A stretch of 64,000 nucleotides of DNA, from the IMG/VR virus record IMGVR_UViG_3300032236_001613, positions 62,001 through 126,000 of that record; one strand, 5' to 3'. The translations under genes were made by a program, and so were the position numbers. The notes beneath the pieces were generated by a model. The model did not search any database. It had not been told where the DNA came from and saw nothing but the letters and a program-made list of their open reading frames with translations. This document shows, piece by piece, positions 2,211-18,227 of the stretch; the stretch's first letter is position 1; every line of letters starts with the position of its first letter.

Positions 2211-2269
2211 ATCTAGCTCCTTAGTTAGTAAGCCGTTATTATACTGGAGTTTTACCAGAATGTCAAATA

Positions 2270-2430
2270 GACCCGGGCTAACTCTAGACAATTACATTGC
2301 CGAAAGTTTGCTATCTTGTCCAACCCCCGGGCAGCTGGACTCAACAGGGTTATGTACTCATTTCGTAATGCAGAGCAGCGGCTACCAAAACCCTGCTAAC
2401 ACCTTGCCCGGCTCTGTTTTGTCATTACCC
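2270..2430 (-). ncRNA. Candidate structured ncRNA with pseudoknot
   Basis: ORF-free unit between two promoters; nested stems GTAATG/CATTAC and CAGAGC/GCTCTG; loop CAGGGTT can pair with downstream AACCCTG. Confidence 0.45.
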
Positions 2431-2458
2431 GTACATTATAGCAGGTTTTACCAGAATG

Positions 2459-3001
2459 TCAAGCCCGATCTACAGGTTGCCAAATACACTGATCCCAAGT
2501 GGATACTTTGATGTGGTCTTGACTGTCCGTATCGGATTGTGCTAGAAATAGCTCCTCGTATTCGGCCGGATTGTAGGCTATTAGATTGTCTACTTCCATG
2601 CCAAACGGAACGTCGCTTTCTTGATCCTGAAACACCCAACGTCCGGGTTCAATTTCACGCATAGCGAACCGTTCACGAGCTTCTTCGTCAAGTCCTACTA
2701 CACGTAGGCAATGACAGGGCTTGCCGTTTGTAGAGTTGTATAGTGCTTCACTAGTGATCACGTAATAATAGTTAGATCCACTATCTTCCATAGGCTTACG
2801 CTCGCGTACTCGATCGCCGACCTTAAATGGGCTAGGGATCTGTCTGTTCTTTCGAGCAGTAGCAGCCAATTCATCCATTTCTTTTATAAATTCCTTCAAC
2901 TTATCCGTATGCTCTTGTTCTTTTTTTGTAGACTTGATTAACTGGTTGATCAACCAGTATACGATTAATACTCCAATGATACATTGTACGATCATGACCA
3001 T
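2459..3001 (-). CDS. Membrane-anchored hypothetical protein
   Basis: N-terminal TM, FKVGDRVR motif, C-terminal WDQCIWQP shared with 12988..13353. Confidence 0.75.
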   Translation of the reverse strand: MVMIVQCIIGVLIVYWLINQLIKSTKKEQEHTDKLKEFIKEMDELAATARKNRQIPSPFKVGDRVRERKPMEDSGSNYYYVITSEALYNSTNGKPCHCLRVVGLDEEARERFAMREIEPGRWVFQDQESDVPFGMEVDNLIAYNPAEYEELFLAQSDTDSQDHIKVSTWDQCIWQPVDRA

Positions 3002-3004
3002 GGT

Positions 3005-3373
3005 TTATACTCCTCCAAACCAGCTAGTATACCAAGACTTTTTGGGTTTATACTGTTCTTGCTGTTTAGCTTCGCGTGCTATATACTCTTGTTCCTTATA
3101 GGCGGCCAGTTCTCGACGAGCGTCACGGCCATTTTCGATAGCTTGCTCCAAATCTCGTCGGTTTTGATATGCCCGATGATGTAGGTGATCAATTTCTTCG
3201 GCAGCTTCTCTTATTTGTCGTTTGTAGTCTGCTAACAAGGCAGCGGAACGTGCAGTTTCATCTTTAAGTTCTTGGATGTGCAGGCGCTGTAATTCCACAA
3301 TGGTGGTGCTATCTGCCAACATAGTGGCCAATTGGTCTTTGTCCAAATTAAGCAGATCGGGTTTGCTCAACAT
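3005..3373 (-). CDS. Coiled-coil protein
   Basis: Heptad-like helix, aromatic C-terminus KKSWYTSWFGGV; AGGAG RBS. Confidence 0.75.
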   Translation of the reverse strand: MLSKPDLLNLDKDQLATMLADSTTIVELQRLHIQELKDETARSAALLADYKRQIREAAEEIDHLHHRAYQNRRDLEQAIENGRDARRELAAYKEQEYIAREAKQQEQYKPKKSWYTSWFGGV

Positions 3374-3376
3374 TGT

Positions 3377-3574
3377 TTACTCCTTTTCTTTAAACTCGGG
3401 CATATGCTGAGACCAATCATATGTACCTACTTCATGATCCTCAGTCGGTTCTGGCAGTTGGAGTTTCAAAGCTTTGATCTCATCTTTAAGAGCACGGTTC
3501 TTGGCACGCAGGCCTGCTACAGTTTTCTCCAGCTGCTCACTGTACTCTTCGTAACTAAATTTGGGTCGAGACAT
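3377..3574 (-). CDS. Small coiled-coil protein
   Basis: RBS; directly downstream of promoter 3606-3634. Confidence 0.75.
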   Translation of the reverse strand: MSRPKFSYEEYSEQLEKTVAGLRAKNRALKDEIKALKLQLPEPTEDHEVGTYDWSQHMPEFKEKE

Positions 3575-3636
3575 TTCTGTTGCTCCTTACTGTCTAAGTG
3601 CGTATATTATACTAAGGTTTTACCGAAAGGTCAAGT

Positions 3637-3906
3637 CTATTTTTCAGTTTTGATTGCCTTAGCCACCATAGCTTCAATTTCTTTAACCACAGCAGCCAGT
3701 ATTGAACGGTAATATAATGATAGATTGTGTGCTATAACCCACACGATAGCCAATGTCCCGTAGAAGATCTTAGGTGGTTCGTGCCATAGTAAGGCACCTA
3801 GTGAGGTCCATGCAGCAATAGCGATAGCGAGCCGCTGTAGCAGCTCGCTTCGGCTAATGTTAGTAGTTACTCGAACTTCACTCACCATCAAACCCGCTTC
3901 ATGCAA
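3637..3906 (-). CDS. Small membrane protein
   Basis: Two hydrophobic segments; true start may be downstream of the annotated one. Confidence 0.55.
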   Translation of the reverse strand: MHEAGLMVSEVRVTTNISRSELLQRLAIAIAAWTSLGALLWHEPPKIFYGTLAIVWVIAHNLSLYYRSILAAVVKEIEAMVAKAIKTEK

Positions 3907-4727
3907 GTAATTTCAGCGAAGTTCGTCCAACTGTCCGGAAAGGCTACCTTCAAGTCTGCAATCTTAATCACAGCACGACATGACAGCTCCAACATACGCT
4001 CGCTATTATCATGAATGAAGTCAAGAATTGCTTTCTTTTCTTCTTCTTCGAAGCTGTACTTCTGCAGCATACCTGATTCAGTAACGTGACGCAGCCAGAT
4101 CAGCTTTTCACGATCGGTATCCATCTGTAGGTCAATGTAGTGGCAACGCGACTCAATCGCCTTCAAGTGGTTACGGAGTTTCTTAGAGCGCACGAAATCA
4201 AACTTCAAGTTGGTAATGAAGATTGCGCCACCCAAGAACTCAAAGCGATCTGGAATACCTTCACGTCGTAGCAAGCGACTGTCCTTGTTCCATGAAATGA
4301 AACGACGTTCGCTACTGTCAAGAGCGCCTTTAAGAGTGTTCAAGCTCTCTTCTTCTTCAAGTACAGTATCACAGTCGTCAAAGCCGATCACGTTCTTTTC
4401 TTCGCGGAACTCAAAGAGTTTAGCATATAGACCAATGCTAGATGCTGTACCTTTGACAATCTCATAGCGTGGCTTGCGACCGGCCAGTAGATTAAACAGA
4501 TCATCCTTAGCCAGGATTTCGCCTACGCCGTGGCTCTTGCCTACGCCAGCAGGACCTGATACAATAAGAGCACGAACGTGGCCTTGCTTAACGGCGCGGG
4601 TTACGTCGTGGAATACCTTAAAACGATTTTGCAAGCGGGTAAGAATCTGTGCATCAGTTTCTTTAGCAACAGACTTAGCAACGTCGGCAATACGATCCTG
4701 ATCCAATTCAATGGTGCTTTTGGTCAT
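3888..4727 (-). CDS. Phage P-loop (AAA-type) ATPase
   Basis: Walker A GPAGVGKS, Walker B IGFDDCD, sensor-like IFITN, ESRC arginine-finger region. Confidence 0.85.
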   Translation of the reverse strand: MTKSTIELDQDRIADVAKSVAKETDAQILTRLQNRFKVFHDVTRAVKQGHVRALIVSGPAGVGKSHGVGEILAKDDLFNLLAGRKPRYEIVKGTASSIGLYAKLFEFREEKNVIGFDDCDTVLEEEESLNTLKGALDSSERRFISWNKDSRLLRREGIPDRFEFLGGAIFITNLKFDFVRSKKLRNHLKAIESRCHYIDLQMDTDREKLIWLRHVTESGMLQKYSFEEEEKKAILDFIHDNSERMLELSCRAVIKIADLKVAFPDSWTNFAEITCMKRV

Positions 4728-4800
4728 TTAAGGTCCTTAAAAAGTAGAATTAATTACGCATCAACAGGTATATTATACTGCAAAGACCCTAATGGGTCAA

Positions 4801-5082
4801 TTAAGACTTAGTATCTTTGAGTACTCGTTTAATCATCTTCTGAAGCATTTGGTTGTTCGACTCGGAATCTTCTAGTTCGGCAGTCAAACGGGCGACCTGA
4901 GCAGTCAAACGCTCAACTTCGATCTTTTGGCGCTCTAGATCGTTCTGTAACTGCTGCTGTTGGGTTCGCGCATTCTGGGCGTCTAGTTTATATGCGTCAC
5001 GGCTTTTGATAGCTAGGGCTGCTAGCTCCATAAGCGGAGTGTCTGCAGTAGGTACAGGGTTATTGGCGGGTTCTAGTTTCAT
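4801..5082 (-). CDS. Coiled-coil protein
   Basis: Heptad pattern; AAGGA RBS; upstream promoter. Confidence 0.7.
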   Translation of the reverse strand: MKLEPANNPVPTADTPLMELAALAIKSRDAYKLDAQNARTQQQQLQNDLERQKIEVERLTAQVARLTAELEDSESNNQMLQKMIKRVLKDTKS

Positions 5083-5158
5083 AGTATGGACATCCTTCTA
5101 GTGTAGTAATTATCCAGGTAGATAACTATACACTAGAAGTTTTGGATAGTCAACCAGA

Positions 5159-5365
5159 TTATTCTGCAAATTCTTGCTCTTGGTAGTAAGCCAAGAGTTC
5201 GCGTTGAATAGTAGGAATCATCTCACCATCGCTTTCAATAGTAAAGCGGATAGGTGCATGACGCCAACTCTGTGTACGCTGGAACTCAGCGAACAGTTTT
5301 CGATGTCGAGCATTAGTTACATCAAACAATTCGTAAGGACGCATATGCAGATTCAATCGGCTCAT
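5159..5365 (-). CDS. Hypothetical protein
   Basis: AAGGAG RBS, compact operon spacing. Confidence 0.7.
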   Translation of the reverse strand: MSRLNLHMRPYELFDVTNARHRKLFAEFQRTQSWRHAPIRFTIESDGEMIPTIQRELLAYYQEQEFAE

Positions 5366-5380
5366 GGTCGTTCTCCTTAG

Positions 5381-5662
5381 TTAGGCTGCAACGGATTCGG
5401 ATTTCTTCTGTGTCTTAGTGCGCCGGGCTAGGCCGTCTTCAAGAGCTGCACGGACCTCAGCACGCCCATCATCAAAGTCAATGCTGATCAAGTATTCGAT
5501 AGCAGCGATCTTAGTCATGGGTTCGGGCAATTCGATCATATCAATGCAGTCATGATCAGTTTTGGCCAAAACCTTAACGCGAGCTGCATCGGTAGCAAAC
5601 CTGGTTTTGAACTGGCCTTTCAAACGGCTAACGCCGGCGTGTGTAAAAAGTTTATCAGTCAT
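5381..5662 (-). CDS. Hypothetical protein
   Basis: GAGGAG RBS; promoter ~5691-5720. Confidence 0.75.
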   Translation of the reverse strand: MTDKLFTHAGVSRLKGQFKTRFATDAARVKVLAKTDHDCIDMIELPEPMTKIAAIEYLISIDFDDGRAEVRAALEDGLARRTKTQKKSESVAA

Positions 5663-5726
5663 TTTGTCAACTCCTCTGTCTGTGTGCGTGTATTATACGA
5701 AACACAGACAGAGTTGTCAACCATTT

Positions 5727-6011
5727 TTAGTTCAAGCGTGGTGGTTCAGGATCGTATTCATCTTCGGTAGCGTACTGGTCTTCTGGATCGTAAGGCATAG
5801 TAGTCTCCTCTGTATCAGTGTCGTTATCAGTGTCAATCTCTTCCTCGTAGAATTCTCTAGCGGAATCGAGTTCGTCCTCAAAGTCGTCATCGCAGTAGTG
5901 CATAATATCGGCCAAAAGATCTGCAGGGCAAGTCCAAGTGGTGCCGTCGTTGCTAGCCAGCAGATCACGGATACGCTGCACAGCCTGTTGGTGTAGGGTC
6001 AAAGTAGTCAT
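5727..6011 (-). CDS. Acidic hypothetical protein
   Basis: Start moved to ATG 6011 (AAGGAG RBS); D/E-rich tail. Confidence 0.7.
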   Translation of the reverse strand: MTTLTLHQQAVQRIRDLLASNDGTTWTCPADLLADIMHYCDDDFEDELDSAREFYEEEIDTDNDTDTEETTMPYDPEDQYATEDEYDPEPPRLN

Positions 6012-6067
6012 TGTCCGTGCTCCTTTTGTTAAGTGTATATTATACAATCAACTAGGTATTGAGTCAA

Positions 6068-6424
6068 CTATTCGTCATTGTCGCATATTTCGCAAGGTTC
6101 CCAAGGTAATGCTCCGTGTGTGCAAGGTTTAGGGTCAGATTTCTTGGGAAGTGGAAGGTTCTTTAAAGGAGTAGTGCTGAATTCAGCAGATCGAACTACT
6201 CTTTTTAGTTCGTTGTCCCGAACTCTTTTATGAATGGGCTTTTCTTTTGCTGGGGTATCTCTTTCTGGAGGTTTTGAGTTCCTCAGTGTTTGTATCAAAC
6301 TATCTGTGTGAGCTACAGCAGATTGTGCTATCTTTATAGGATCCAATTTTTCGTTTGCTATGTTAGCCAACATTCCTTGCATGGCCATAGCCGCGATTTG
6401 CTCTCGTTTAGTTAAGTGCTTCAT
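6068..6424 (-). CDS. Hypothetical protein
   Basis: LTKRE.IAAMAMQG.LA motif common in small phage proteins; C-terminal CxH..CxxC. Confidence 0.7.
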   Translation of the reverse strand: MKHLTKREQIAAMAMQGMLANIANEKLDPIKIAQSAVAHTDSLIQTLRNSKPPERDTPAKEKPIHKRVRDNELKRVVRSAEFSTTPLKNLPLPKKSDPKPCTHGALPWEPCEICDNDE

Positions 6425-6471
6425 CTCTATATACCTTTGATGATACAGTATACAGAGATTCTAACCTATTG

Positions 6472-6672
6472 TCAATCGGGTTTTTTGAGCCAAAACTCCG
6501 CATCGTGTGCTATGCATTCTAGTGTGCCTGCGCCCGGGTAGTGGCGTAGAATGTGCATAGCACGTTCGCGCAAGTGTCGAGGGACTCTGGGTGTGGCTTT
6601 TGGGTTTAAGAGTTCTACTAAGAAGCGTTCTGCTGCTAGTAGAGCGCGATATCGTTCATCGGGTAGGGTCAT
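6472..6672 (-). CDS. Small conserved phage protein (BPSL0761-like)
   Basis: MTLPDERYRAL...PRVPRHLRERA..ILRHYP pattern recalled from that family. Confidence 0.6.
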   Translation of the reverse strand: MTLPDERYRALLAAERFLVELLNPKATPRVPRHLRERAMHILRHYPGAGTLECIAHDAEFWLKKPD

Positions 6673-6675
6673 TTA

Positions 6676-7305
6676 TTAATCCTCTGTATCAAGTCCGGAT
6701 AATTCTCTCATTCGTCTTGTATTAAAAAATGCAATCATTTCACCTAATTTAGCAGGCAAAGATTCGGACAAGACAAATCTATAGTTTTTGAAAGATACTT
6801 CGTTTCCAAAATATTGATTCATTTCGTCTGCATTTTTAAATGTAACGCGACTCTGTCCAGGACTGTGTATATCATAGACAGAAACATAATGTCCTTGATT
6901 GAATAATCTTTTCCAAATAGCAAACCCTTCATCACTTAACTGGTCGTCGCTGATAATGCATACTGGATAGTGAGTATCTTTGAGTACAGCATTATACAAG
7001 TTACTAGCGTAAGGAGGATGCCCGCTGTAATTAGGATCTTTGCCTACTACGTTTACCAAAAGGTTTTGTGGTTTTTTGGAAAATTCTATAGCTAGAAATA
7101 TATGTGTTTCTGTACCATACCAGTAGTAAATTGTACTTTCTAATTCAATTTTGAACAAGTCTTTAGATAACTTTTTTGGGTGTATTCCAGAAGATAATAG
7201 TTCTTTCACGTTTTGAGAAATTATAGGGTACATATCGCCTATATTATTTCTTTTGGGCATCTCTGTCAACCATGACTGGTTGAAATCAGTTCTACTCGTA
7301 GTCAT
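6676..7305 (-). CDS. AT-rich hypothetical protein, possibly virion-associated
   Basis: 209-aa ORF, markedly AT-richer than neighbours; N-terminal ..WLTE. Confidence 0.75.
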   Translation of the reverse strand: MTTSRTDFNQSWLTEMPKRNNIGDMYPIISQNVKELLSSGIHPKKLSKDLFKIELESTIYYWYGTETHIFLAIEFSKKPQNLLVNVVGKDPNYSGHPPYASNLYNAVLKDTHYPVCIISDDQLSDEGFAIWKRLFNQGHYVSVYDIHSPGQSRVTFKNADEMNQYFGNEVSFKNYRFVLSESLPAKLGEMIAFFNTRRMRELSGLDTED

Positions 7306-7308
7306 TCT

Positions 7309-7491
7309 TCAGCCCAAATCCGTTTTATAGCGAATGTGTACAGCAAAATCATAGGCTGCTTCAGGAGTCAAGCCTTTGGCTACAGCCCACCCAAGAGTCA
7401 AACTAAACCAATCTTGTGAACTGTCTGTATCGATTTCTGATGCTCTATCAGAGCATTCGGTTTTGAACAGTTCGATCAATTGTTCGTTCAT
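7309..7491 (-). CDS. Hypothetical protein (MNE- start family)
   Basis: Stop/start overlap with neighbours. Confidence 0.7.
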   Translation of the reverse strand: MNEQLIELFKTECSDRASEIDTDSSQDWFSLTLGWAVAKGLTPEAAYDFAVHIRYKTDLG

Positions 7492-7697
7492 TATTCAACT
7501 CCGAAATGATGCTTCAAAATACTACCACGGCTAACAAATGGATGATCAGCATCCTTGTCCATAATATAAGCACATTCCTTGACAATCAACTGGGCGAAAT
7601 TTTTAATAAAAACTTCTTCCAAACTGTTGGCAAAATCAAATCCTGGCAGAGGTTTATATCCAGCCTGTTCAGCAAGTTCTCTAATTCGCTCGTTCAT
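7491..7697 (-). CDS. MNERI-family small protein
   Basis: MNERIRELAEQAG..FAQLIVKEC..KHHFGVE. Confidence 0.8.
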   Translation of the reverse strand: MNERIRELAEQAGYKPLPGFDFANSLEEVFIKNFAQLIVKECAYIMDKDADHPFVSRGSILKHHFGVE

Positions 7698-7975
7698 TCT
7701 TCAATTCCGAAATGTTTTAGGATCTCGTCTCGAAGTTCACCGTTGCGAAATTCGGTAGCAAAGTCGTCCACCAAATGCACATAAAGATACTGCATAGCCT
7801 GTTCGGATTTGGGCAGTTTCAGAAATTTCTTGATACGCCGCCGTTCTTCTTTACTATATTCCTTAAGGTGATCCTTATGCACATAAAAGCCATCTGGGTC
7901 GTAATAGTCAAATTCAAATTCCGTGGCAAGATTGTGACAGCGACTTTCCATGCTTTCAACAATATATTCGTTCAT
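7694..7975 (-). CDS. Small protein sharing MNE..HFG.E ends with its neighbours
   Basis: Starts MNEY, ends LKHFGIEE; ATGA overlaps. Confidence 0.75.
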   Translation of the reverse strand: MNEYIVESMESRCHNLATEFEFDYYDPDGFYVHKDHLKEYSKEERRRIKKFLKLPKSEQAMQYLYVHLVDDFATEFRNGELRDEILKHFGIEE

Positions 7976-8178
7976 TCTTTAACTCCAAAATAACGCTTCA
8001 AACGAACAGGATACTCACTTGCGGGAAAACGATGGTCGACAAAATCCTGTATAGTCTTAGCACATTCCATAACAATCAACTCTGCGAACTTTTCAATAGC
8101 CTCTTGATCCCAAGCATCAGGAGTACCGTCGCAATACAAACCTGCTTCCTCAGCGAGAGTGTGAATACGTTCGTTCAT
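7972..8178 (-). CDS. MNERI-family small protein
   Basis: MNERIHTLAEEAG..FAELIVMEC..RYFGVKE. Confidence 0.8.
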   Translation of the reverse strand: MNERIHTLAEEAGLYCDGTPDAWDQEAIEKFAELIVMECAKTIQDFVDHRFPASEYPVRLKRYFGVKE

Positions 8179-8390
8179 TATTCAAAGACCTTAACAACTT
8201 CTTTATGCACCCGCTTGTCTGTCTGTAGGTATTCAACCCAGTTTTCAGCATCTGCGAGGTCGTGAAATTTACCATCTCGCTTAGTAGGATGCCAGATGTT
8301 AATCCAAAACAAGCCTAAACACTTGCTCTGTATCGCATACTGTGGGCGTCCGTAGTAGGCGCCGCTATGCTTAACAATACGGTATTTCAT
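8178..8390 (-). CDS. Hypothetical protein
   Basis: MKYRIV..Y.IQ.K.L.FW pattern; coupled overlaps. Confidence 0.7.
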   Translation of the reverse strand: MKYRIVKHSGAYYGRPQYAIQSKCLGLFWINIWHPTKRDGKFHDLADAENWVEYLQTDKRVHKEVVKVFE

Positions 8391-8632
8391 GCTTCACCTT
8401 CTACTAATGACAAGTTGTATTCACGAATTATAGGCTTTTCATTATTGATAGAGCAAGGATCTTCCATCACGATAAGACGTGTGTCGTCGATAACATAGAT
8501 AACAGTTGGATCTTCTAGCCCTTCAAGAAAAACCCGATGCATCATAGCGTGTTTACTAACGCCCCACCAAGTAGGGTAATCGATCTTTTCCCAATCCAAC
8601 GAAAAAAGAAACAGGATAGGTGGTGCTTTCAT
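8387..8632 (-). CDS. Hypothetical protein
   Basis: ATGA overlaps on both sides. Confidence 0.65.
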   Translation of the reverse strand: MKAPPILFLFSLDWEKIDYPTWWGVSKHAMMHRVFLEGLEDPTVIYVIDDTRLIVMEDPCSINNEKPIIREYNLSLVEGEA

Positions 8633-12029: not shown

Positions 12030-12083
12030 AGCCAACTCCTTACTGTTACTGTAGGAATAGTATACTATGGTTTTACCAAAAGG

Positions 12084-12527
12084 TCAAGCCAATTCTTTCT
12101 TCTTGGCTCGGACTCGGGCTGTTCCCTTCTTAGTATGACGCACCATGCGAGCGTAACGATGCTGCCCCATCAAGATTTGGATACGACCTTCAAACCCGTC
12201 CTTAATAGGAACGCTCCCAGTTTCAATTTTGAAGTTGTTCTTGTCAAACCACTGAAGCCACTCGTAAAGTTCGGCTTCGGCTTCCTCACCGCGGCTCAAT
12301 ACTGCCACGCAGGGATGCTTATGATAGGCGTTCTCCGGACACCAAACGACGCCATTCTTATCTGCTCGTTTGTAGTCCTCGTCGTACCATGCATAGTCTG
12401 GATAATTACCGTCGACTACAATGCCCACGCAATGCCGCCCGATGCCTACTTCGCCTTCGAGATCCAGTTGACAGTTATTCTTAGCAGCCCAAACCGCCAT
12501 CCAAGTAATCTTTTCATCGCGTGTCAT
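12084..12527 (-). CDS. Hypothetical protein
   Basis: Own promoter and AGGAG RBS. Confidence 0.75.
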   Translation of the reverse strand: MTRDEKITWMAVWAAKNNCQLDLEGEVGIGRHCVGIVVDGNYPDYAWYDEDYKRADKNGVVWCPENAYHKHPCVAVLSRGEEAEAELYEWLQWFDKNNFKIETGSVPIKDGFEGRIQILMGQHRYARMVRHTKKGTARVRAKKKELA

Positions 12528-12581
12528 TGTATTACTCCTTGCTCTAACTATGAGTATATTATAACAGGTTTTACCAAATGG

Positions 12582-12923
12582 TCAAACACAATCTGAGACA
12601 AATTCTGTGTCAGGTGCAACCAGCGTTTCTACAAACCAAGTACCGCCTGTGCCCTGAGTATGCTCTTGTGCGTAGTCTTCTGCAGACTCTACGCTAGGAA
12701 ACGGGCCCGCAAAGTTAAATCCCTTGACAGGATCTCCATGTACTACAACAAGATCCACATTATCATCTTGTCCATCAACATTGGGCGTCCGCATCATGAC
12801 TACAAACCATGCAGCGGCTGTGCAGTACTCCCCGCCATAGTCGTAGGCTGCTTCTTCTTGATCAAAAGGCCCGATAAACTCGAAGCCGCTAGAAAGGTCA
12901 CCAAATAATATAACAAACTGCAT
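12582..12923 (-). CDS. Protein with internal duplication
   Basis: Two copies of V...GD...GF.F.GPF...E.A.DY..E...  WFV. Confidence 0.8.
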   Translation of the reverse strand: MQFVILFGDLSSGFEFIGPFDQEEAAYDYGGEYCTAAAWFVVMMRTPNVDGQDDNVDLVVVHGDPVKGFNFAGPFPSVESAEDYAQEHTQGTGGTWFVETLVAPDTEFVSDCV

Positions 12924-12987
12924 AGACAGTCTCCTTTTGCTATGAGTATATTATAACAGGTTTTACCAAAAAGTCAAGACCTGTGTT

Positions 12988-13353
12988 CTAAAGAGTCAAA
13001 CCTTCGACACCATTTTTCCGAGGTTGCCAGATACACTGGCTCCACTGAACTAGTTCTCGGTCATTCCTGTCATCGTAGGGTTCTAACCATGCCACAGGCA
13101 CCGCGTAAGACATAGGCCTGCCACTATGAGTGGAAGTTCCCCGATCAATCTGCCTACCGTCGGCCAGCACAGCAGTGAGGTCGTGCACGTCACAGGTGAT
13201 GCGTTGCCCGCCTGTTGTCTCTACAGTGGCGTGCCTGGCAGGTGCTCGCACCACAGCGTATTGCAGTTCATCGGGCGGTGGCGTGCCCTGCTGGTCAATC
13301 TGAATCACACGGACCCGTTGTCCAACTTTAAATCCCGTACTCATATTAAACAT
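12988..13353 (-). CDS. Hypothetical protein (FKVGQRV / WSQCIWQP)
   Basis: Own promoter and RBS; motifs shared with 2459..3001. Confidence 0.7.
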   Translation of the reverse strand: MFNMSTGFKVGQRVRVIQIDQQGTPPPDELQYAVVRAPARHATVETTGGQRITCDVHDLTAVLADGRQIDRGTSTHSGRPMSYAVPVAWLEPYDDRNDRELVQWSQCIWQPRKNGVEGLTL

Positions 13354-13405
13354 TTTCTCCTTGCTAGTGTCTGTGTATTATAGCAGGTTTTACCAAGAAG
13401 TCAAG

Positions 13406-13640
13406 TGCTTCTCTCTGCTGGCGGTGTTTGTCATCTCACCACAAACAATTATGTGGTATCCGCATCCCAACACAGAGAGACTTTCGTGTGCCAACGCCCG
13501 TTAGGTTAGACGGCAGTATTGCTACTGGAGACCATTGACAGTCATTCTCGCGAATGATATGTTGTTCTCAAACCACCCGTGGTTGTCACACCACTTCATC
13601 ATGCGGGTCACATTAGTGGCTGACTAAGCCACGTGGTCTT
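13406..13640 (-). ncRNA. Candidate multi-hairpin structured ncRNA
   Basis: ORF-free; GNRA-capped stems TCATTC-GCGA-GAATGA and CAGTA-GCAA-TACTG; 8-bp TCTCTCTG/CAGAGAGA enclosing a 7-bp stem. Confidence 0.6.
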
Positions 13641-13643
13641 TAA

Positions 13644-13928
13644 TTAACTAAAAATGTCAGCCAAAATCTGGTCAATTTCATGCTGACGTGCACGTTCGCC
13701 ATGAACGCGATCCATGAACTCTGACATCATGCCCGGACGATTGTGGACATAGTCCAGCTGGCCGTATGCCGAAATGTCAAAGTAACGGAAGGATGGTGCA
13801 CCAGGATAGTACTTAATCCACTGACCGCGCTGCAGGACCAAACGACCGTCCTGGATAGCACGCCGAGTGGCCGGATCCGAAAGAACCGGAGTAGGAAGAA
13901 ACTGACGACCCTTACGATTGATAACCAT
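13644..13928 (-). CDS. Hypothetical protein
   Basis: Promoter 13978-14006 and AAGGAG RBS. Confidence 0.7.
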   Translation of the reverse strand: MVINRKGRQFLPTPVLSDPATRRAIQDGRLVLQRGQWIKYYPGAPSFRYFDISAYGQLDYVHNRPGMMSEFMDRVHGERARQHEIDQILADIFS

Positions 13929-14002
13929 ATTAATTGCTCCTTACAAAAAAGTGTTTAAACTCTAACTCAACAGAACTATTATACTAAACTTTTACCAAAA
14001 GG

Positions 14003-14164
14003 TCAATAAAGACTTGAAAGATTTTCACGTTGCCAAACCCAGAGATCCTGTATCACATGAAACGCAGGTCCAACAGGGCCAATAGCGACGCCAGTGCGGC
14101 TATCCACTTCAAAAGTCTGCCAACCGCCTACAACACTACGGCAAGTGTATTCTTTGACAAACAT
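14003..14164 (-). CDS. Small hypothetical protein (53 aa)
   Basis: Manual translation MFVKEYTCRSVVGGWQTFEVDSRTG...; AAGGAG RBS. Confidence 0.65.
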   Translation of the reverse strand: MFVKEYTCRSVVGGWQTFEVDSRTGVAIGPVGPAFHVIQDLWVWQRENLSSLY

Positions 14165-14173
14165 GTCTGCTCC

Positions 14174-14326
14174 TTAGAGTTTGATCAGCACATCAGGATA
14201 GGCAGTAGCAAATGTTCGTGTTCGTTCACCACGCGGATCATAGTAATAATCCACTCGTTGACAATAGCGTTTGGCCAGCCACTTCACCACGAACACAGGC
14301 AGTATCACAGTCCATTTTGCTAACAT
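14174..14326 (-). CDS. Small hypothetical protein (50 aa)
   Basis: Manual translation MLAKWTVILPVFVVKWLAKRYC...; AAGGAG RBS, promoter 14353-14380. Confidence 0.65.
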   Translation of the reverse strand: MLAKWTVILPVFVVKWLAKRYCQRVDYYYDPRGERTRTFATAYPDVLIKL

Positions 14327-14376
14327 TGTTTGCTCCTTACTAGTATCTATATAGTATAGCAGGTTTTACCAAAAGG

Positions 14377-14595
14377 TCAACCAACCAAACCCTCATCCAT
14401 CATCTCCAAGAGTTTGATGGTGTATTCTCGCTCGTGACTGTAAGTCCTTGACTCGTTAGCCCATTCCTCACCATAGACAGCGAGGAACTCGTTGTAGATC
14501 TCTCGAAGAGAGATTTGAGGAAAACGGAATGCAACCTCATGGTACAGTTGGCCTTGGTTGACCATCTCGCGCATCTCGATGTTGATCTCTTTCAT
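14377..14595 (-). CDS. Hypothetical protein
   Basis: Own promoter 14620-14647. Confidence 0.7.
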   Translation of the reverse strand: MKEINIEMREMVNQGQLYHEVAFRFPQISLREIYNEFLAVYGEEWANESRTYSHEREYTIKLLEMMDEGLVG

Positions 14596-14649
14596 CTTAC
14601 CCTCGTTTGCTATGAATATATTATAGCAGGTTTTACCAAAAGGTCAAAC

Positions 14650-14844
14650 TTAGAATTGGCGAACGCAGAGTGACTGAATATGCGGAGCAGGCGCATAAAA
14701 ACTATTTTGTTCCTGCTGATGCAGCCATCCAGTACCTGCAGCTAGACAGGCCTCTTTGCTTTCAAAAGGCCCAATCTGGGTTATAGCTGAGCCGCCGCGA
14801 TGGTCACTCGCCGCAATAGTAAGAATCAATAACCAACCTGCCAT
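14650..14844 (-). CDS. Small exported/membrane protein
   Basis: WLLIL..., F.SKEAC..A pattern; GGAG RBS. Confidence 0.7.
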   Translation of the reverse strand: MAGWLLILTIAASDHRGGSAITQIGPFESKEACLAAGTGWLHQQEQNSFYAPAPHIQSLCVRQF

Positions 14845-14845
14845 A

Positions 14846-15046
14846 TTATTTCTCCTTCTTCAATTTAGGAAAGTGATAGGCTAAATTTTCCCAGAGACCT
14901 AGAACTATTGCTGCGGGTATAAACAGCACCATTAGACGGCTCCTGTCTAGGCCTAGCCCTAGTAATGGCATAGTCGTTAGTATCACAATACCTGCTATGA
15001 TCAGAGCCACAACTACGCTCAGTAAAATGACCAATAGAGTCACCAT
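14846..15046 (-). CDS. Small two-TM membrane protein
   Basis: Hydrophobic; 1-nt spacing with neighbours. Confidence 0.7.
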   Translation of the reverse strand: MVTLLVILLSVVVALIIAGIVILTTMPLLGLGLDRSRLMVLFIPAAIVLGLWENLAYHFPKLKKEK

Positions 15047-15047
15047 A

Positions 15048-15251
15048 TTACTTGTCCTTCTTGAAAAGATCCACTACAGACATCAAAATGCTCTTCAGTA
15101 AGAACACTACAAAGCCTACAACCGCGTATGGCAGACAGATGATAAAGCCTATAACAGGCACAGCCATCACAGCAGCTCCTAATGAGAACACGGCAGCGAA
15201 TGCTACTATGCACCATAAAATCAACAGAGTTGAGTAACTAACGGTAATCAT
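15048..15251 (-). CDS. Small two-TM membrane protein
   Basis: Hydrophobic; 1-nt spacing. Confidence 0.7.
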   Translation of the reverse strand: MITVSYSTLLILWCIVAFAAVFSLGAAVMAVPVIGFIICLPYAVVGFVVFLLKSILMSVVDLFKKDK

Positions 15252-15252
15252 A

Positions 15253-15471
15253 TCACTTGACCTTTTTTGGAAAAATCTTTTTCCAAAGCATAATGGGTGA
15301 TGTGATCAGTAACACGCCCAGCATCAATATACCACCCGGAATTAGAATAATCCACAGTATGGGCCTCTGCTTGGTGCCGAAATGTGCGCCAAACTTCATA
15401 GAAACCATGCCGGCTATTCCCAATGCCAAAAACAATACAACCAGCAAGGTTATGAGACTGATAGTAATCAT
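15253..15471 (-). CDS. Small two-TM membrane protein
   Basis: Hydrophobic; AAGGAG RBS. Confidence 0.7.
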   Translation of the reverse strand: MITISLITLLVVLFLALGIAGMVSMKFGAHFGTKQRPILWIILIPGGILMLGVLLITSPIMLWKKIFPKKVK

Positions 15472-15480
15472 AACATCTCC

Positions 15481-15774
15481 TTAAAACGGAATATCGTCGT
15501 CAAGCTGACGAGTAGATGGCCGAGGAGGACCTACGAACTCACTCTTAGCAACAGCCCGATCAACCCAGTATTGTACCTCCTCTTCGGTCATATAACAGGT
15601 TTCTTCAGGATGTGGCTGCGGCTTACCACGATAGTGCGGGTTCTCAATCCACACGTCGTAATCAGTAAGAATCCATTGACTATCCTTGTAACGATCATAA
15701 TCACCTACATTGTAGGCATATTCACGCATGGCTTCAGCTGGAGTGGCTACGCGATCTTCTTCATCATAAAACAT
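15481..15774 (-). CDS. Protein ending in SSB-tail-like DDDIPF
   Basis: C-terminus LDDDIPF; own promoter and RBS. Confidence 0.8.
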   Translation of the reverse strand: MFYDEEDRVATPAEAMREYAYNVGDYDRYKDSQWILTDYDVWIENPHYRGKPQPHPEETCYMTEEEVQYWVDRAVAKSEFVGPPRPSTRQLDDDIPF

Positions 15775-15828
15775 TGAAGACTCCTTACTGTTACTGTAGG
15801 AATAGTATACTACGGTTTTACCAAAAGG

Positions 15829-16095
15829 TCAAGATTTTTTGTATAGAGAGTGAAGGGCTTCGTGCTGCTCCAAAGCTTTCAACTGCTTCTTCACCTGAGT
15901 GAGATAGAGGTAGCGGCGATTGACTTCGGATCGGGCCAACTCACCATCGCAGGTCAAGTTCTCAGGGCTAAGGTCAGACTCTAGATGACCTGCCAGATGC
16001 CGACGGTGTTGCGGATCGTTGAGGTCCAGATCGGCCTCCTTGAAGAAGCGATTGATCTGATTGATGTGATCTAGATATTCAGTGAGTTCTTCCAT
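15829..16095 (-). CDS. Conserved phage protein
   Basis: LSPENLTCDGEL motif; own promoter and RBS. Confidence 0.75.
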   Translation of the reverse strand: MEELTEYLDHINQINRFFKEADLDLNDPQHRRHLAGHLESDLSPENLTCDGELARSEVNRRYLYLTQVKKQLKALEQHEALHSLYKKS

Positions 16096-16152
16096 AGGTT
16101 GCTCCTTGCTAGTGAGTCAGTATTATACTAAGGTTTTACCAAAAGGTCAACA

Positions 16153-16359
16153 TCAATTCACAAGATTTACACGCTCTAAACGGTAAAAGAAATCTTGCTT
16201 AGGGTCAACAATTCCAAACTCCACAAAGTATTCCGAACCTGTAAGTTCGTCATGGCAATGGAACCCGTCATCTTGTGTGTAGTCAATACGAAACACATCA
16301 CCATTCTGTATAAAGAATACTGAGTTCTGTGCAATGTCATGCAATTCGTTATGGTCCAT
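16153..16359 (-). CDS. Hypothetical protein
   Basis: Stop/start overlap. Confidence 0.7.
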   Translation of the reverse strand: MDHNELHDIAQNSVFFIQNGDVFRIDYTQDDGFHCHDELTGSEYFVEFGIVDPKQDFFYRLERVNLVN

Positions 16360-16691
16360 TATGCCTTCTCCTCAGTTTGAGCTTTGAGCTTGGCTAACTT
16401 TTTTTCGAGATTACTGATTTCTTTCAAGCGGGCCTTTTCCTTTCGGATAGCCTCTTTCTTCTTTTCTTCCTCTTCTCGAATTTTACGTTCAGCATCCTGC
16501 TTCTGATGTTCATTCCACCAGTCCAGATGCTGTTTCTTAGTAACTCCGCACTCTGTCCAATCAATGCGATCCACAATAGTAGGATCTGCTCGCATAGCAG
16601 CACAAACTACGGCTTCGAACTGTTTGACACGTTTCTCAAGGTTTCGTGAATTACGTTCTCGATCATAACTATCATCTACATAGCAAGGCAT
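16359..16691 (-). CDS. Hypothetical protein with charged coiled coil
   Basis: MPC start, WW.EH..QD motif; AAGGAG RBS. Confidence 0.75.
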   Translation of the reverse strand: MPCYVDDSYDRERNSRNLEKRVKQFEAVVCAAMRADPTIVDRIDWTECGVTKKQHLDWWNEHQKQDAERKIREEEEKKKEAIRKEKARLKEISNLEKKLAKLKAQTEEKA

Positions 16692-16703
16692 ATCATATTC
16701 TCC

Positions 16704-17057
16704 TTAGTCTGAACTGTCGTAGGCGTTGATCTGACCGCAATGGATACACTTATACTGGTCATAGCCGCGGCCTAGATTCTGTAAGAACTTCCACTCATGC
16801 CCAGAACACTTAGCCGCAGTCTCCTTAGAGACATAACCGTGACCACCACAGTGATCACAGATTTTACGGAAATGACTGTAACGATGACGATTCTCTGGAG
16901 TATCAGGCTTGCCATGCAGGTTGTAGCTGTTGATAGAAAGATTCCACCCACCATGACCACGGCAGCGAGGACACTCTACAGTATAATTAAGCCAAGGCTC
17001 CTTGCGTGGATGATCCAAGAATGCATCTGGATGATCTGGCGTAAGAAAGTCTGACAT
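16704..17057 (-). CDS. Zinc-finger protein (DnaJ-type CxxCxGxG)
   Basis: CPRCRGHG, CDHCGGHG, CIHCG. Confidence 0.8.
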   Translation of the reverse strand: MSDFLTPDHPDAFLDHPRKEPWLNYTVECPRCRGHGGWNLSINSYNLHGKPDTPENRHRYSHFRKICDHCGGHGYVSKETAAKCSGHEWKFLQNLGRGYDQYKCIHCGQINAYDSSD

Positions 17058-17110
17058 ATGTTACTCCTTGCTCTAACTATGAAACTATTATAGCAGGTTT
17101 TACCAAAAGG

Positions 17111-17257
17111 TCAACCGTTATCTGGAACTTCCTTGAAGCCAAATGCCGTAAGGTCATCAAGGTTAATGACTTCCCGGAGATAGTTCAGTAGCATCAGCTC
17201 GGCTGCATCGAGATCTTCTGCATCAAACTCTGTTTCGAAATTGATTTTGAATTTCAT
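17111..17257 (-). CDS. Small acidic protein (48 aa)
   Basis: Manual translation MKFKINFETEFDAEDLDAAELMLLNYLREVINLDDL...; stop lies in the next -35 box. Confidence 0.55.
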   Translation of the reverse strand: MKFKINFETEFDAEDLDAAELMLLNYLREVINLDDLTAFGFKEVPDNG

Positions 17258-17462
17258 AGGCTTCCTCACGGCTCATTTCATTATTGATACGATTGAAAAT
17301 GCAGTAGTCAGACACTCCTGCATCATACCCGGTCTTATAAGCATGACCACATTTGGCGTCGTGCCCGTTAACGGCATCGTAATACTGCTGATCTACACGA
17401 CCTTCTTCACGCCCGTCGAAGTAACCACGAGCATAGGCATAATAGGTGCTATCGTAAGACAT
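17223..17462 (-). CDS. Hypothetical protein
   Basis: YARGYFDGR..YKTGYDAG repeat-like motif; AAGGAG RBS. Confidence 0.7.
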   Translation of the reverse strand: MSYDSTYYAYARGYFDGREEGRVDQQYYDAVNGHDAKCGHAYKTGYDAGVSDYCIFNRINNEMSREEAYEIQNQFRNRV

Positions 17463-17480
17463 TGTGTTGCTCCTTTAATC

Positions 17481-17690
17481 TTATACCAATTTCATATAGT
17501 TAAATTCGGTCTTATTGCAGCGGCTGCAGATTCTGGTTTGATATATCACAAAACTGTAGACTCGACCCTTTCTATGCCAGGTTTCATTAAGAGACATGTT
17601 TGTCTCTTCATGATCCTCTCCATTGAGAAACTCACGAACGTAGTATTCGTTTAGATTAGCCCACTGACTCCACTTGTGTATAATGCACAT
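17481..17690 (-). CDS. Hypothetical protein
   Basis: MCIIHKWSQW..RICSRCNK pattern. Confidence 0.65.
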   Translation of the reverse strand: MCIIHKWSQWANLNEYYVREFLNGEDHEETNMSLNETWHRKGRVYSFVIYQTRICSRCNKTEFNYMKLV

Positions 17691-17747
17691 ATTACTTCAG
17701 CTCCTTGCTCTAACTGTGAATACATTATAGCAGGTTTTACCAAAAAG

Positions 17748-17990
17748 TCAACCTTCTTCGTCTTCTTCCTCGTCGTCTTCGGGCCAATCGTCGTCCTCAT
17801 CGTCTTCCCATTCTCCGTTACAATCTTCTCCCCAGGGTTCGTCGATGACGAGATCTAGGTTCTCGTCAAAAACTTCTTGGTTGACAATGGATACGTTGAC
17901 ATGGTTGTGTTCATAGTTTGCCAAAGCTTCAACATCAGTTTCTGCTTCAACTTCATACTGATGGGTGATTCGAACGTAGAATTTGGGCAT
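17748..17990 (-). CDS. Acidic hypothetical protein
   Basis: Own promoter and RBS; poly-D/E tail. Confidence 0.75.
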   Translation of the reverse strand: MPKFYVRITHQYEVEAETDVEALANYEHNHVNVSIVNQEVFDENLDLVIDEPWGEDCNGEWEDDEDDDWPEDDEEEDEEG

Positions 17991-18041
17991 CTCAATCTCC
18001 TTGTTATTGAAATAGAATTATACTAAGGTTTTACCAAAAGG

Positions 18042-18227
18042 TCAACCAGCTGGCGTTATATTCACAACAGTGAATAGTCCTCCCGGATAGGCTTCGAGAG
18101 CAACTGAAGGAAATAAATCAACGGCAGCATTTAGATCCGCTGCTTCAATCGTTAGACTTTCTAGTCTCCCAGGGTGAGGGAACTCAGGAGGATCTGATAC
18201 TTGAAAAGTTATAGTCCATAGACTCAT
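18042..18227 (-). CDS. Hypothetical protein
   Basis: GGAG RBS, overlap. Confidence 0.6.
   Translation of the reverse strand: MSLWTITFQVSDPPEFPHPGRLESLTIEAADLNAAVDLFPSVALEAYPGGLFTVVNITPAG

What the first reader, a model, noticed from the sequence alone, without database searches (positions are those of the whole stretch)
2238..18045. Conserved palindromic operator embedded in the early promoter spacer
Seen: the normally free -35/-10 spacer is conserved. TTGACC-TTTT-GGTAAA is an imperfect inverted repeat (TT[G/T]ACC-N4-GGT[A/C]AA) overlapping -35, with a nested GGT-AAA-ACC dyad. Other left-arm promoters (4771-4800, ~5691-5720, ~6039-6067, ~10446-10475) lack it, defining two regulons. Inference: binding site for a dimeric phage repressor/activator that switches off one early class, or a recombinase site.
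Basis: partly seen in the sequence, partly recalled or inferred. Interest (0 to 1): 0.6.

Follow-up and report, generated by a model that had tools for sequence, protein, structure and literature searches.

The report
Conserved spacer box in phage promoters

Summary
TTGACCTTTTGGTAAA (up to 2 mismatches) occurs 17 times, all on the minus strand at window 2251-18045, against 0.07 expected. Each copy is a complete sigma70-type promoter in front of a small ORF. About ten promoters in the same region lack the motif.

The window belongs to a 328 kb T4-superfamily jumbo phage from freshwater, with a Gp23-type capsid protein and no RNA polymerase, sigma factor, AsiA or MotA of its own.

The proposed palindrome is not the conserved feature. 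Across 90 related viral loci (520 promoters), 36% carry an oriented, asymmetric box, (T)GGTAAAACC, 3-5 bp from each hexamer. The TTTT, the C of TTGACC and any dyad symmetry are not conserved.

The near-identity of the whole 29 bp core in this genome fits PeSL-like promoter cassettes that recombine. Homology with a 326 kb relative and with contigs from other lakes breaks exactly at the upstream edge of the -35.

Promoter class is specific to gene family (p = 5.5e-10), which gives moderate support to "two regulons".

My best guess, at about 0.4 confidence, is a recognition site for an unidentified trans-acting factor. I found no candidate protein and no RNA data. It is a new variant of a known kind.

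The parts
18017..18045 (-). box promoter (TTGACC, spacer 17, TATAAT; box GGTAAAACC at 18027-18035) before the ORF at 17748-17990
17724..17751 (-). box promoter (TTGACT, spacer 16, TGC-TATAAT) before the ORF at 17481-17690
17087..17114 (-). box promoter (spacer 16, TGn) before the ORF at 16704-17057
   Evidence: orthologous module in the 326 kb relative ends at this -35
16122..16150 (-). box promoter (spacer 17) before the ORF at 15829-16095, an 88 aa family found in 22 related loci
15804..15832 (-). box promoter (spacer 17, TATACT) before the operon starting at 15481-15774
14620..14647 (-). box promoter (spacer 16, TGn) before the ORF at 14377-14595
14353..14380 (-). box promoter (spacer 16, TGn, TATACT) before the ORF at 14174-14326
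   Evidence: contigs from another lake diverge just beyond 14382
13978..14006 (-). box promoter with variant box GGTAAAAGT (spacer 17) before the ORF at 13644-13928
13377..13404 (-). box promoter (TTGACT, TTCT, spacer 16) before the ORF at 12988-13353
   Evidence: loose ends beyond 13404
12950..12977 (-). box promoter (spacer 16, TGT) before the ORF at 12582-12923
12558..12585 (-). box promoter (spacer 16, TGT) before the ORF at 12084-12527
   Evidence: loose ends beyond 12585
12059..12087 (-). box promoter (spacer 17, TATACT) before the ORF at 11385-12029 (Pfam GP88)
   Evidence: homology with the relative ends at 12087
10791..10819 (-). box promoter (spacer 17) before the ORF at 10478-10759
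   Evidence: homology with the relative ends at 10820
9006..9033 (-). box promoter (TTGACT, spacer 16, TATACT) before the ORF at 8629-8976
3606..3634 (-). box promoter (TTTC variant, spacer 17) before the ORF at 3377-3574
2435..2462 (-). box promoter (TTGACA, TTCT, spacer 16, TGn) with no ORF downstream; it precedes a predicted structured RNA of about 165 nt (2262-2428)
2238..2266 (-). box promoter with variant box GGTAAAACT (TTGACA, spacer 17) before the ORF at 1821-2210
4772..4800 (-). plain (box-less) consensus promoter before the AAA ATPase ORF at 3888-4727, a gene family never found behind a box promoter (0 of 14)
5692..5720 (-). plain promoter before the conserved two-gene module at 5381-5662 and 5159-5365; the first gene's family is never behind a box promoter (0 of 16)
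6039..6067 (-). plain promoter before the ORF at 5727-6011
10447..10475 (-). plain promoter (with TGn) before the ORF at 10198-10398; the only plain promoter inside the 9-18 kb run of box promoters
330..19750 (-). hyperplastic early region: about 50 small, mostly orphan ORFs on the minus strand, driven by about 27 consensus sigma70-type promoters

Best explanation
Shown: the 17 repeats are host-sigma70-type early promoters of a freshwater T4-superfamily jumbo phage. Each heads a small gene cassette in a hyperplastic early region. Two layers of conservation overlap. Layer 1 (shown): an oriented 9-10 bp box, (T)GGTAAAACC, sits at about -26 to -17. It lies 4 (+/-1) bp after the -35 and 4 (+/-1) bp before the -10. 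It is conserved across a whole lineage of uncultured relatives in roughly a third of their consensus promoters, while the bases around it vary freely, so the box itself is under selection. Layer 2 (shown for the boundaries, inferred for the cause): within this genome the rest of the spacer (TTTT, TGC or nTAG) and part of the leader are also near-identical. The likely reason is that the promoter cores are the homology at which promoter-plus-gene modules are exchanged and homogenised, as described for PeSL cassettes of T4-type phages. Inferred mechanism for the box: it is the recognition site of a sequence-specific trans-acting factor that binds asymmetrically between the two sigma contacts. That factor is most likely a phage protein of unrecognised fold made early or carried in the virion. 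It would set a subset of early promoters apart from the plain ones. [quoted passage not shown] Keeping them active once the host polymerase is modified is the alternative.
For: The promoters are real and clustered. The phage is T4-type with no RNAP, sigma, AsiA or MotA of its own, so early transcription must use the host holoenzyme. The box is conserved across the lineage: at least 119 viral stretches carry the full architecture, many with 3-8 copies. In 90 loci, 188 of 520 non-redundant promoters carry it, with N3-5 flanks randomised. An unbiased spacer profile recovers it. Its position is tightly confined: (d1,d2) = (4,4) 120, (3,5) 33, (5,3) 16, (4,3) 12. It is absent as a clustered feature from 185,579 bacterial species genomes, where there are 61 scattered single hits. 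85 of 92 sources form one gene-sharing network. The cultured relatives GAP32 and CBB have a different conserved spacer word at the same register, as expected for lineage-specific factor-site pairs. Promoter class is specific to gene family (16/1, 0/16, 0/14; chi2 = 77, p = 5.5e-10). Cassette boundaries fall at the -35 edge in a 326 kb relative and in contigs from four other freshwater studies. The preceding ORF stops at the TGA inside the -35 in 11 of 17 cases. Literature: PeSL cassettes (PMC2839356, PMC4122927); T4 early promoters carry unexplained extra consensus and the early shut-off mechanism is unknown (PMC2988021).
Against: No binding protein was identified. The 50 early ORFs have no HTH or repressor family. 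The genome has no GntR, HTH_39, GIY-YIG, sigma70, AsiA or MotA match. The two most conserved early proteins give confident models with no informative fold match. No RNA data exist for this phage, so neither promoter activity nor different kinetics is shown. The family-specific promoter class could reflect linkage by descent, because a promoter and its gene are inherited together. The tight positional window and fixed orientation fit a direct RNA polymerase contact equally well. Box promoters are, if anything, closer to consensus than plain ones (TGn 67% vs 40%).
Confidence: 0.4

Rival explanations
1. The box is a cis-only promoter element. It is read directly by the host RNA polymerase holoenzyme (sigma region 3 or the beta-prime zipper contacting the spacer), or it acts through the shape of its A-tract. 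It makes these promoters stronger or faster than plain consensus promoters, with no extra protein involved.
For: Orientation is fixed, the sequence is asymmetric and the position is confined to +/-1 bp relative to both hexamers. The box co-occurs with the fullest set of polymerase elements (TGn 67% vs 40%, GG before the -35 73% vs 47%). No binding protein was found. T4 early promoters are known to carry extra consensus thought to optimise polymerase contacts (PMC2988021).
Against: Bacterial RNA polymerase is highly conserved, yet related phages of enterobacteria use a different spacer word at the same place. No bacterial genome shows clustered use of the architecture. Only about a third of the lineage's promoters have the box, and its presence follows gene family. 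The box slides by a base relative to the -10, unlike the extended -10 element.
Confidence: 0.25
2. There is no regulatory function. The box is a passenger: part of an ancestral promoter copy that spread by duplication and is kept alike by recombination or gene conversion between cassettes, serving only as homology for shuffling (PeSL-like) or homing.
For: Module boundaries lie at the promoter cores. The whole 29 bp core, including bases that are free in relatives, is homogenised in this genome. Several gene families carry box and plain promoters about 50:50, showing frequent promoter swapping. PeSL precedent: PMC2839356, PMC4122927.
Against: Across the lineage the bases on both sides of the box are randomised and its position shifts by a base, yet the 9-mer stays intact, including its centre (AAA in 55 of 59). 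Homology-driven conservation would preserve contiguous stretches and not one internal word. Diverged box-like promoters also exist elsewhere in the genome on the other strand (genome 154666, 197711, 209807, 214844).
Confidence: 0.15
3. The box is bound by a host GntR/FadR-type regulator such as PdhR, whose 9 bp core is GGT-N3-ACC. A subset of phage early genes would then be gated by the host's metabolic state.
For: The E. coli PdhR box is AATTGGTnnnACCAATT, with GGTnnnACC needed for tight binding, and natural sites read TGGTaaaACC (grcA, fliA, wcaA, fadI; PMC7660256). In this phage the left flank TTTTGGT matches TTGGT. The phage has no GntR-family gene, so the protein would have to be the host's. 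The closest cultured relatives by capsid protein infect Proteobacteria.
Against: The centre of a GntR site is normally free, whereas here it is fixed as AAA. The right flank shows no symmetric A. The orientation bias is unexplained for a symmetric dimer. The host is unknown.
Confidence: 0.1
4. One reading: the imperfect palindrome TTGACC-N4-GGTAAA, which overlaps the -35, is the operator of a dimeric phage repressor or activator, or a site for a site-specific recombinase.
For: The dyad is present in this genome and extends to GGTT-g-ACC-TTTT-GGT-aa-AACC in copies preceded by GG. It overlaps the core promoter.
Against: The pairing positions are not conserved in relatives: the -35 ends in C in 14 of 188, and the loop length and sequence vary. 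GG and CC do not covary (odds ratio 1.04). Box promoters show no excess complementarity (6.4% vs 4.3% in shuffles). No recombinase or HTH gene was found.
Confidence: 0.05

Closest known systems
PeSL (promoter-early stem-loop) cassettes of T4-type phages (Arbiol et al. 2010, PMC2839356; Comeau et al. 2014, PMC4122927)
   Same: Both occur in T4-type phages. Both are repeated near-consensus sigma70 early promoters concentrated in hyperplastic regions, each directly upstream of an orphan ORF. Conservation extends beyond the hexamers, and the motifs sit at insertion, deletion and replacement boundaries between related phages. Box-less promoters of this lineage do have stem-loops flanking the -35.
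   Different: The box promoters have no convincing stem-loop or terminator. Their extra conserved part is a fixed, oriented sequence word inside the spacer, shared across distantly related members of the lineage. PeSL stems vary in sequence while keeping their pairing.
T4 middle promoters and the MotA box (sigma appropriation by AsiA and MotA; PMC2988021)
   Same: Both are a phage-lineage-specific 9 bp word placed at a nearly fixed distance (+/-1) upstream of a sigma70 -10 element. Both define a promoter class within the prereplicative genes of a T4-type phage.
   Different: The MotA box is centred at -30 and replaces the -35. Here the box is centred near -21 and the consensus -35 is kept. No AsiA or MotA homologue is encoded.
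GntR/FadR-family operators such as the PdhR box AATTGGTnnnACCAATT (PMC7660256)
   Same: The 9 bp core GGT-N3-ACC is identical, and natural PdhR sites read TGGTaaaACC.
   Different: The centre is fixed, the flanks are asymmetric and the orientation is fixed. The phage has no GntR-family gene and the host is unknown.
Conserved-spacer RpoD-like promoters of the giant phages GAP32 and CBB (found here; promoters listed but the spacer not discussed in PMC5259590)
   Same: These are related giant T4-superfamily phages (capsid protein 67-68% identical). A subset of consensus promoters near small early genes carries a conserved spacer word beginning 4 bp after the -35.
   Different: The word is different (GTTAGAGTACTT), runs right up to the -10, and occurs in only 3-5 copies per genome.

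Membership tests
PeSL cassettes of T4-type phages | Host genome is a T4-type phage | tested here: met
   Gp23 major capsid protein, PF07068, E = 1.2e-79. It is 67-71% identical to the capsid proteins of GAP32, CBB, Vibrio phage 2.275.O and others.
PeSL cassettes of T4-type phages | Repeated sigma70-like early promoter motif concentrated in a hyperplastic region, upstream of orphan ORFs | tested here: met
   About 27 consensus promoters on the minus strand of window 330-19750, each before a small ORF. Of the 50 ORFs, 49 have no informative family.
PeSL cassettes of T4-type phages | A stable stem-loop next to or overlapping the promoter | tested here: not met
   Box promoters: complementarity of 6 bp or more between upstream sequence and spacer in 6.4%, against 4.3% in shuffles. 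The only fold is a weak interrupted 3+4 bp hairpin. Box-less promoters of relatives do meet this feature.
PeSL cassettes of T4-type phages | Motifs lie at indel or replacement boundaries between related phages | tested here: met
   Homology patches with the 326 kb relative are shuffled and end at the -35 edge (10820, 12087, 17116). Contigs from other lakes diverge just beyond 12585, 13404, 14382 and 17751-17753.
PeSL cassettes of T4-type phages | Mini-circle formation by recombination between flanking motifs | not testable with these tools
   Needs inverse PCR on infected cells.
Palindromic operator of a dimeric repressor or activator | Dyad symmetry maintained across copies and relatives | tested here: not met
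   the centre is fixed, the flanks are asymmetric, the -35 ends in C in 14 of 188, and GG and CC do not covary.
Palindromic operator of a dimeric repressor or activator | A cognate DNA-binding protein is encoded | tested here: inconclusive
   No recognisable family in the early region or genome. Most early proteins are orphans, so a novel fold is not excluded. About 320 ORFs outside the early region were not scanned one by one.
GntR/FadR (PdhR-type) operator | GGT-N3-ACC core | tested here: met
   GGTAAAACC in 15 of 17 copies. PdhR sites with the same 9-mer are listed in PMC7660256.
GntR/FadR (PdhR-type) operator | Symmetric flanks (AATT...AATT) and a sequence-free centre | tested here: not met
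   T before GGT in 80% with no matching A after ACC; centre AAA in 55 of 59.
GntR/FadR (PdhR-type) operator | A GntR-family regulator is available | not testable with these tools
   None in the phage. The host is unknown.
T4 MotA-box middle promoter | Box centred at -30 that replaces the -35 element | tested here: not met
   The box spans about -25 to -17 and the consensus TTGACn is retained.
T4 MotA-box middle promoter | AsiA and MotA are encoded | tested here: not met
   PF09010 and PF09158 give no match at E <= 1.
Site-specific recombinase site | A recombinase or integrase gene is associated with the sites | tested here: inconclusive
   No recombinase or GIY-YIG family among the 50 early ORFs or in the genome-wide PF01541 scan. 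Other nuclease families were not searched.

The most novel reading that the evidence does not exclude
The box is the operator of a new, lineage-specific phage transcription factor of unknown fold. This factor would split host-sigma70-dependent early promoters of giant T4-related phages into two temporal regulons. That would give the first concrete cis element for the selective shut-off (or prolongation) of early transcription, a step whose mechanism is still unknown even in T4.
Probability: 0.3. Interest if true: 0.7.

Novelty: new variant of a known kind. Interest (0 to 1): 0.55.

Why it matters
T4-type phages take over the host with batteries of very strong early promoters. How these are later switched off is unresolved, and so is the reason they carry consensus beyond the sigma70 elements. 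This lineage offers a sharply defined 9-10 bp spacer word that marks about a third of such promoters and tracks particular gene families. It can be tested with simple reporter, in vitro transcription and pull-down experiments. The same promoters also give natural, population-level evidence from several lakes that promoter cores are the joints at which early gene cassettes are exchanged in giant phages.

Tried and rejected
- Near and distant DNA searches of cultured phages with the early region and with a 44 nt promoter gave no meaningful match.
- A scan of 185,579 bacterial species genomes for the full architecture gave only 61 scattered single hits and no clustered locus, so there is no host clue and no evidence for a host promoter type.
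- Pfam and PHROGs scans of 50 early ORFs found no regulator.
- Genome-wide searches for Sigma70_r2, RNAP beta, GntR, HTH_39, GIY-YIG, AsiA and the MotA C-domain were all negative.
- Guilt by association found a winged-helix HTH_39 family in 19 related loci, but it is absent from this genome, so I rejected it as the universal factor.
- AlphaFold models of the two most conserved early proteins (window 5381-5662 and 5159-5365) reached pLDDT 83 but had no informative match by Foldseek or VIA-align, best Z 4.4.
- The hairpin hypothesis for the box was rejected.
- Rfam found nothing at the ORF-less promoter.
- No public RNA runs hold this phage. The laid runs were contigs only, and joints with short sides between promoter cores are ambiguous because the cores are repeats, so I did not count them.
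- A one-call Pfam scan of all remaining ORFs (about 320) was not attempted because it would have needed a very long list of typed references.


Full report
**1. The observation**

The 16-mer TTGACCTTTTGGTAAA occurs 17 times with at most 2 mismatches (9 exact). All copies are on the minus strand between window 2251 and 18045. Chance expectation is 0.07, and none of 100 shuffles reaches 17. The window is bases 62001-126000 of a 328,068 bp virus record, and every copy in that genome lies in this 16 kb stretch.

Read on the minus strand, each copy has this layout:
- TTGACn, then TTTTGGTAAAACC, then either TGC/TGT (16 bp spacer, which creates an extended -10 TGn) or nTAG (17 bp spacer), then TATAAT or TATACT.
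- A 20-35 nt leader, an AAGGAG Shine-Dalgarno and the start codon of a small ORF follow.
- The one exception is the copy at 2462-2435, which has no ORF behind it.

Conservation begins abruptly at the first T of the -35. Pairwise identity is 26% in the 40 nt upstream and 86% across the -35 and the next 16 nt, then falls through the leader.

More plain ones lie at 565, 1266, 1824, 6475, 19572 and 19750. An independent consensus scan finds 70 promoter-like sites in the first 20 kb against 35.4 +/- 6.2 in shuffles, and the best ones are almost all on the minus strand.

**2. What the genome is**

- It encodes a T4-type major capsid protein (PF07068, E = 1.2e-79). This protein is 67-71% identical to those of Vibrio phage 2.275.O, Sinorhizobium phage Phosso, Cronobacter phage GAP32, Pectobacterium phage CBB and Xanthomonas phage XaC1, giant phages of 349-469 kb that infect Proteobacteria.
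- It has no match to RNA polymerase beta, sigma70 region 2, AsiA or the MotA C-domain. Early transcription must therefore use the host sigma70 holoenzyme.
- Public runs that contain the stretch are freshwater metagenomes, and none is RNA.
- The roughly 50 small ORFs of the region are orphans apart from an AAA ATPase and a GP88-family protein.
- This is the hyperplastic early region typical of T4-type phages.

**3. What is actually conserved**

The same architecture is found in many other viral contigs. A scan with TTGACNTTTTGGTAAAACC found 13 of them, including a 326,658 bp relative. Many hold 3-8 copies within a few kb.

From 90 such loci (790 kb) I collected 520 non-redundant promoters defined only by their two hexamers. 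Of these, 188 (36%) have GGTAAA in the spacer.
- The bases between the -35 and the box are free (ACT, AAGT, GTCT and so on), so the TTTT of this genome is not conserved.
- The -35 ends in A in 148 of the 188 and in C in only 14.
- What is conserved is (T)GGTAAAACC. In promoters picked for GGTAAA alone, the next three bases are A, C and C in 95%, 90% and 90%, and T precedes GGT in 80%.
- A profile built without selecting on the box recovers it.
- The centre is fixed: 55 of 59 GGT-NNN-ACC instances read AAA.
- There is no symmetric A after ACC.
- The geometry is tight. Distance from the -35 and distance to the -10 are (4,4) in 120 promoters, (3,5) in 33, (5,3) in 16 and (4,3) in 12.
- The orientation is the same in all 188. 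The 11 spacers with the reverse word GGTTTTACC have it at other positions, where it forms one arm of a hairpin.

The element is therefore an oriented, asymmetric word at about -25 to -17, and not a dyad.

**4. Hairpin or dyad tests**

In this genome the copies preceded by GG can fold as GGTT-g-ACC-TTTT-GGT-aa-AACC. The comparative data do not support this as a selected structure:
- GG before the -35 is a general feature of the lineage's promoters, present in 73% with the box and 47% without.
- GG shows no association with the CC of the box (odds ratio 1.04, p = 1).
- Box promoters show no excess complementarity between upstream sequence and spacer (6.4% against 4.3% in shuffles). Box-less promoters do (16.6% against 8.7%).

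The box-less promoters of relatives are classic PeSLs: inverted repeats of different sequence flank the -35. Examples are TAACCC...GGGTTA, GGGCAnTGC-TTGACA-GCAnTGCCC-TTTT and GTCTTTGG...CCAAAAGAC.

**5. Cassette behaviour**

- Compared with the 326 kb relative, the early region shares only patches, in shuffled order. Several patches end exactly at the upstream edge of a -35 (window 10820, 12087, 17116).
- Contigs from four other freshwater studies match promoter-plus-gene modules and then continue as unlike sequence immediately beyond 12585, 13404, 14382 and 17751-17753.
- A clean 638 bp indel (14837 to 15476, three small ORFs) is present in three of those runs.
- Joints with short sides between cores were not counted, because the cores are repeats.
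- In 11 of the 17 copies the preceding ORF ends with the TGA inside TTGAC.

This matches the PeSL model of modular shuffling (PMC2839356, PMC4122927). It also explains why the whole core, including bases that are free in relatives, is homogenised within this genome.

**6. Phage-determined or host-determined?**

- In one genome for each of 185,579 bacterial and archaeal species, the full architecture occurs 61 times. The hits are single copies scattered over many phyla, with no second relaxed copy nearby.
- 85 of the 92 box-bearing sources, including this window, form one gene-sharing network. The seven outside it have single hits.
- The cultured relatives GAP32 and CBB have their own conserved spacer, TTGACA-N4-(G)GTTAGAGTACTT-TATAAT, in 3-5 promoters near the genome end. 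The CBB paper does not discuss it (PMC5259590).

A lineage-specific word at the same register fits a lineage-specific factor better than a universal polymerase preference, though it does not prove one.

**7. Two regulons?**

I clustered the ORFs of all loci and classified the promoter in front of each family member. Promoter class is strongly non-random across families (chi2 = 77.1, df 16, p = 5.5e-10).
- A 121 aa family is behind a box promoter in 16 of 17 cases.
- The basic protein family of window 5381-5662 is behind a plain promoter in 16 of 16 cases.
- The AAA ATPase family is behind a plain promoter in 14 of 14 cases.
- Five families are mixed at about 50:50.

The caveat is that a promoter and its gene are inherited together, so this is moderate support only.

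**8. Search for a binding protein**

- A literature search for the 9-mer led to the E. coli PdhR box AATTGGTnnnACCAATT. Its 9 bp core GGTnnnACC is required for tight binding, and natural sites read TGGTaaaACC (PMC7660256). The phage has no GntR-family gene, so only a host protein could act this way. The fixed centre and asymmetric flanks argue against it.
- A winged-helix HTH_39 family recurs in 19 related loci but is absent from this genome.
- The two most conserved early proteins that this phage shares with the lineage (5381-5662 and 5159-5365) gave confident models (pLDDT 83.2 and 82.7) with no informative structural match, best Z 4.4.

No candidate can therefore be named.

**9. Verdict**

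The palindromic-operator reading is not supported in its specifics.

The best description is a PeSL-like family of mobile early promoter cassettes carrying a new, oriented spacer box. Its function is not established. My estimates are:
- about 0.4 for a site for an unidentified trans-acting factor, most simply one that selectively shuts off early promoters, a step that is unexplained even in T4 (PMC2988021);
- about 0.25 for a direct RNA polymerase or DNA-shape element;
- about 0.15 for a functionless passenger of recombination;
- about 0.1 for a host PdhR-type regulator;
- about 0.05 for the original dimer-palindrome idea.

Noticed in passing
window about 19235-19537, minus strand (intron 19308-19493): A tRNA-Leu(UAA)-like gene with a long variable arm and an encoded CCA is split in its anticodon loop by a group I intron (Rfam RF00028, 64.3 bits). 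It has its own promoter at 19572-19544. ARAGORN did not report it. Group I introns at this tRNA position are best known from cyanobacteria and plastids (my own knowledge), which may be a hint about the host or the origin of the gene.
   Followed up: partly
window 2262-2428, minus strand: The box promoter at 2462-2435 has no ORF. The roughly 165 nt it would transcribe, up to the next promoter, fold at -59.3 kcal/mol (z = -3.05, 0 of 200 shuffles as stable) and have no Rfam match. This is a candidate phage small RNA.
   Followed up: partly
window, the 17 box promoters (for example 12084-12087, 12582-12585, 14377-14380): In 11 of 17 cases the stop codon of the preceding ORF is the TGA inside the -35 hexamer TTGAC. 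The same holds for 37% of box promoters and 13% of plain promoters in relatives. Genes therefore abut the promoter core with no room for a terminator.
   Followed up: yes
window 5381-5662 and 5159-5365, minus strand: A two-gene early module is conserved in 15-20 related loci and is always behind a plain promoter. In relatives the first protein carries a Lys/Ala/Pro-rich linker and an acidic C-terminal tip (...EDAPF/Y) resembling the SSB C-terminal tip; this phage's copy lacks the tail. The AlphaFold models are confident, but no known fold matched.
   Followed up: partly
window 14838-15475: A 638 bp segment holding three small ORFs is missing, replaced by 13 other letters, in contigs from three other freshwater metagenome studies. 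This is a natural cassette indel that does not sit at a promoter.
   Followed up: partly
NC_019401.1 (GAP32) 11183-14753; NC_041878.1 (CBB) 6000-13155 and 361923-369078: The cultured giant phages GAP32 and CBB have 3-5 consensus promoters with their own conserved spacer, TTGACA-N4-(G)GTTAGAGTACTT-TATAAT. The CBB paper does not discuss this.
   Followed up: partly
related loci such as L211, L243, L252, L197 and L013: Box-less promoters of the lineage are embedded in inverted repeats that flank the -35 (TAACCC...GGGTTA; GGGCAnTGC-TTGACA-GCAnTGCCC-TTTT; GTCTTTGG...CCAAAAGAC). The stems differ in sequence while the structure is kept, so these are genuine PeSL-type promoter-terminator composites.
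   Followed up: partly
related loci, for example L221:1914-2276: A basic 121 aa protein family with a GIY-YIG-like motif by eye, but no Pfam support, sits behind a box promoter in 16 of 17 loci. It is absent from this genome.
   Followed up: partly
genome 154666, 197711, 209807 and 214844 (plus strand, outside the window): Four diverged plus-strand promoters elsewhere in the genome keep TTGACn-N4/5-GGTAAA at the same register, in front of larger genes. One precedes a 389 aa ORF that is followed two genes later by a protein that looks ClpP-like by eye.
   Followed up: no
window 19772-20947 and 20950-22125, plus strand: Two tandem 391 aa ORFs, probably paralogues (the first matches phrog_28193, of unknown function), start the plus-strand arm right after the early region.
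   Followed up: no
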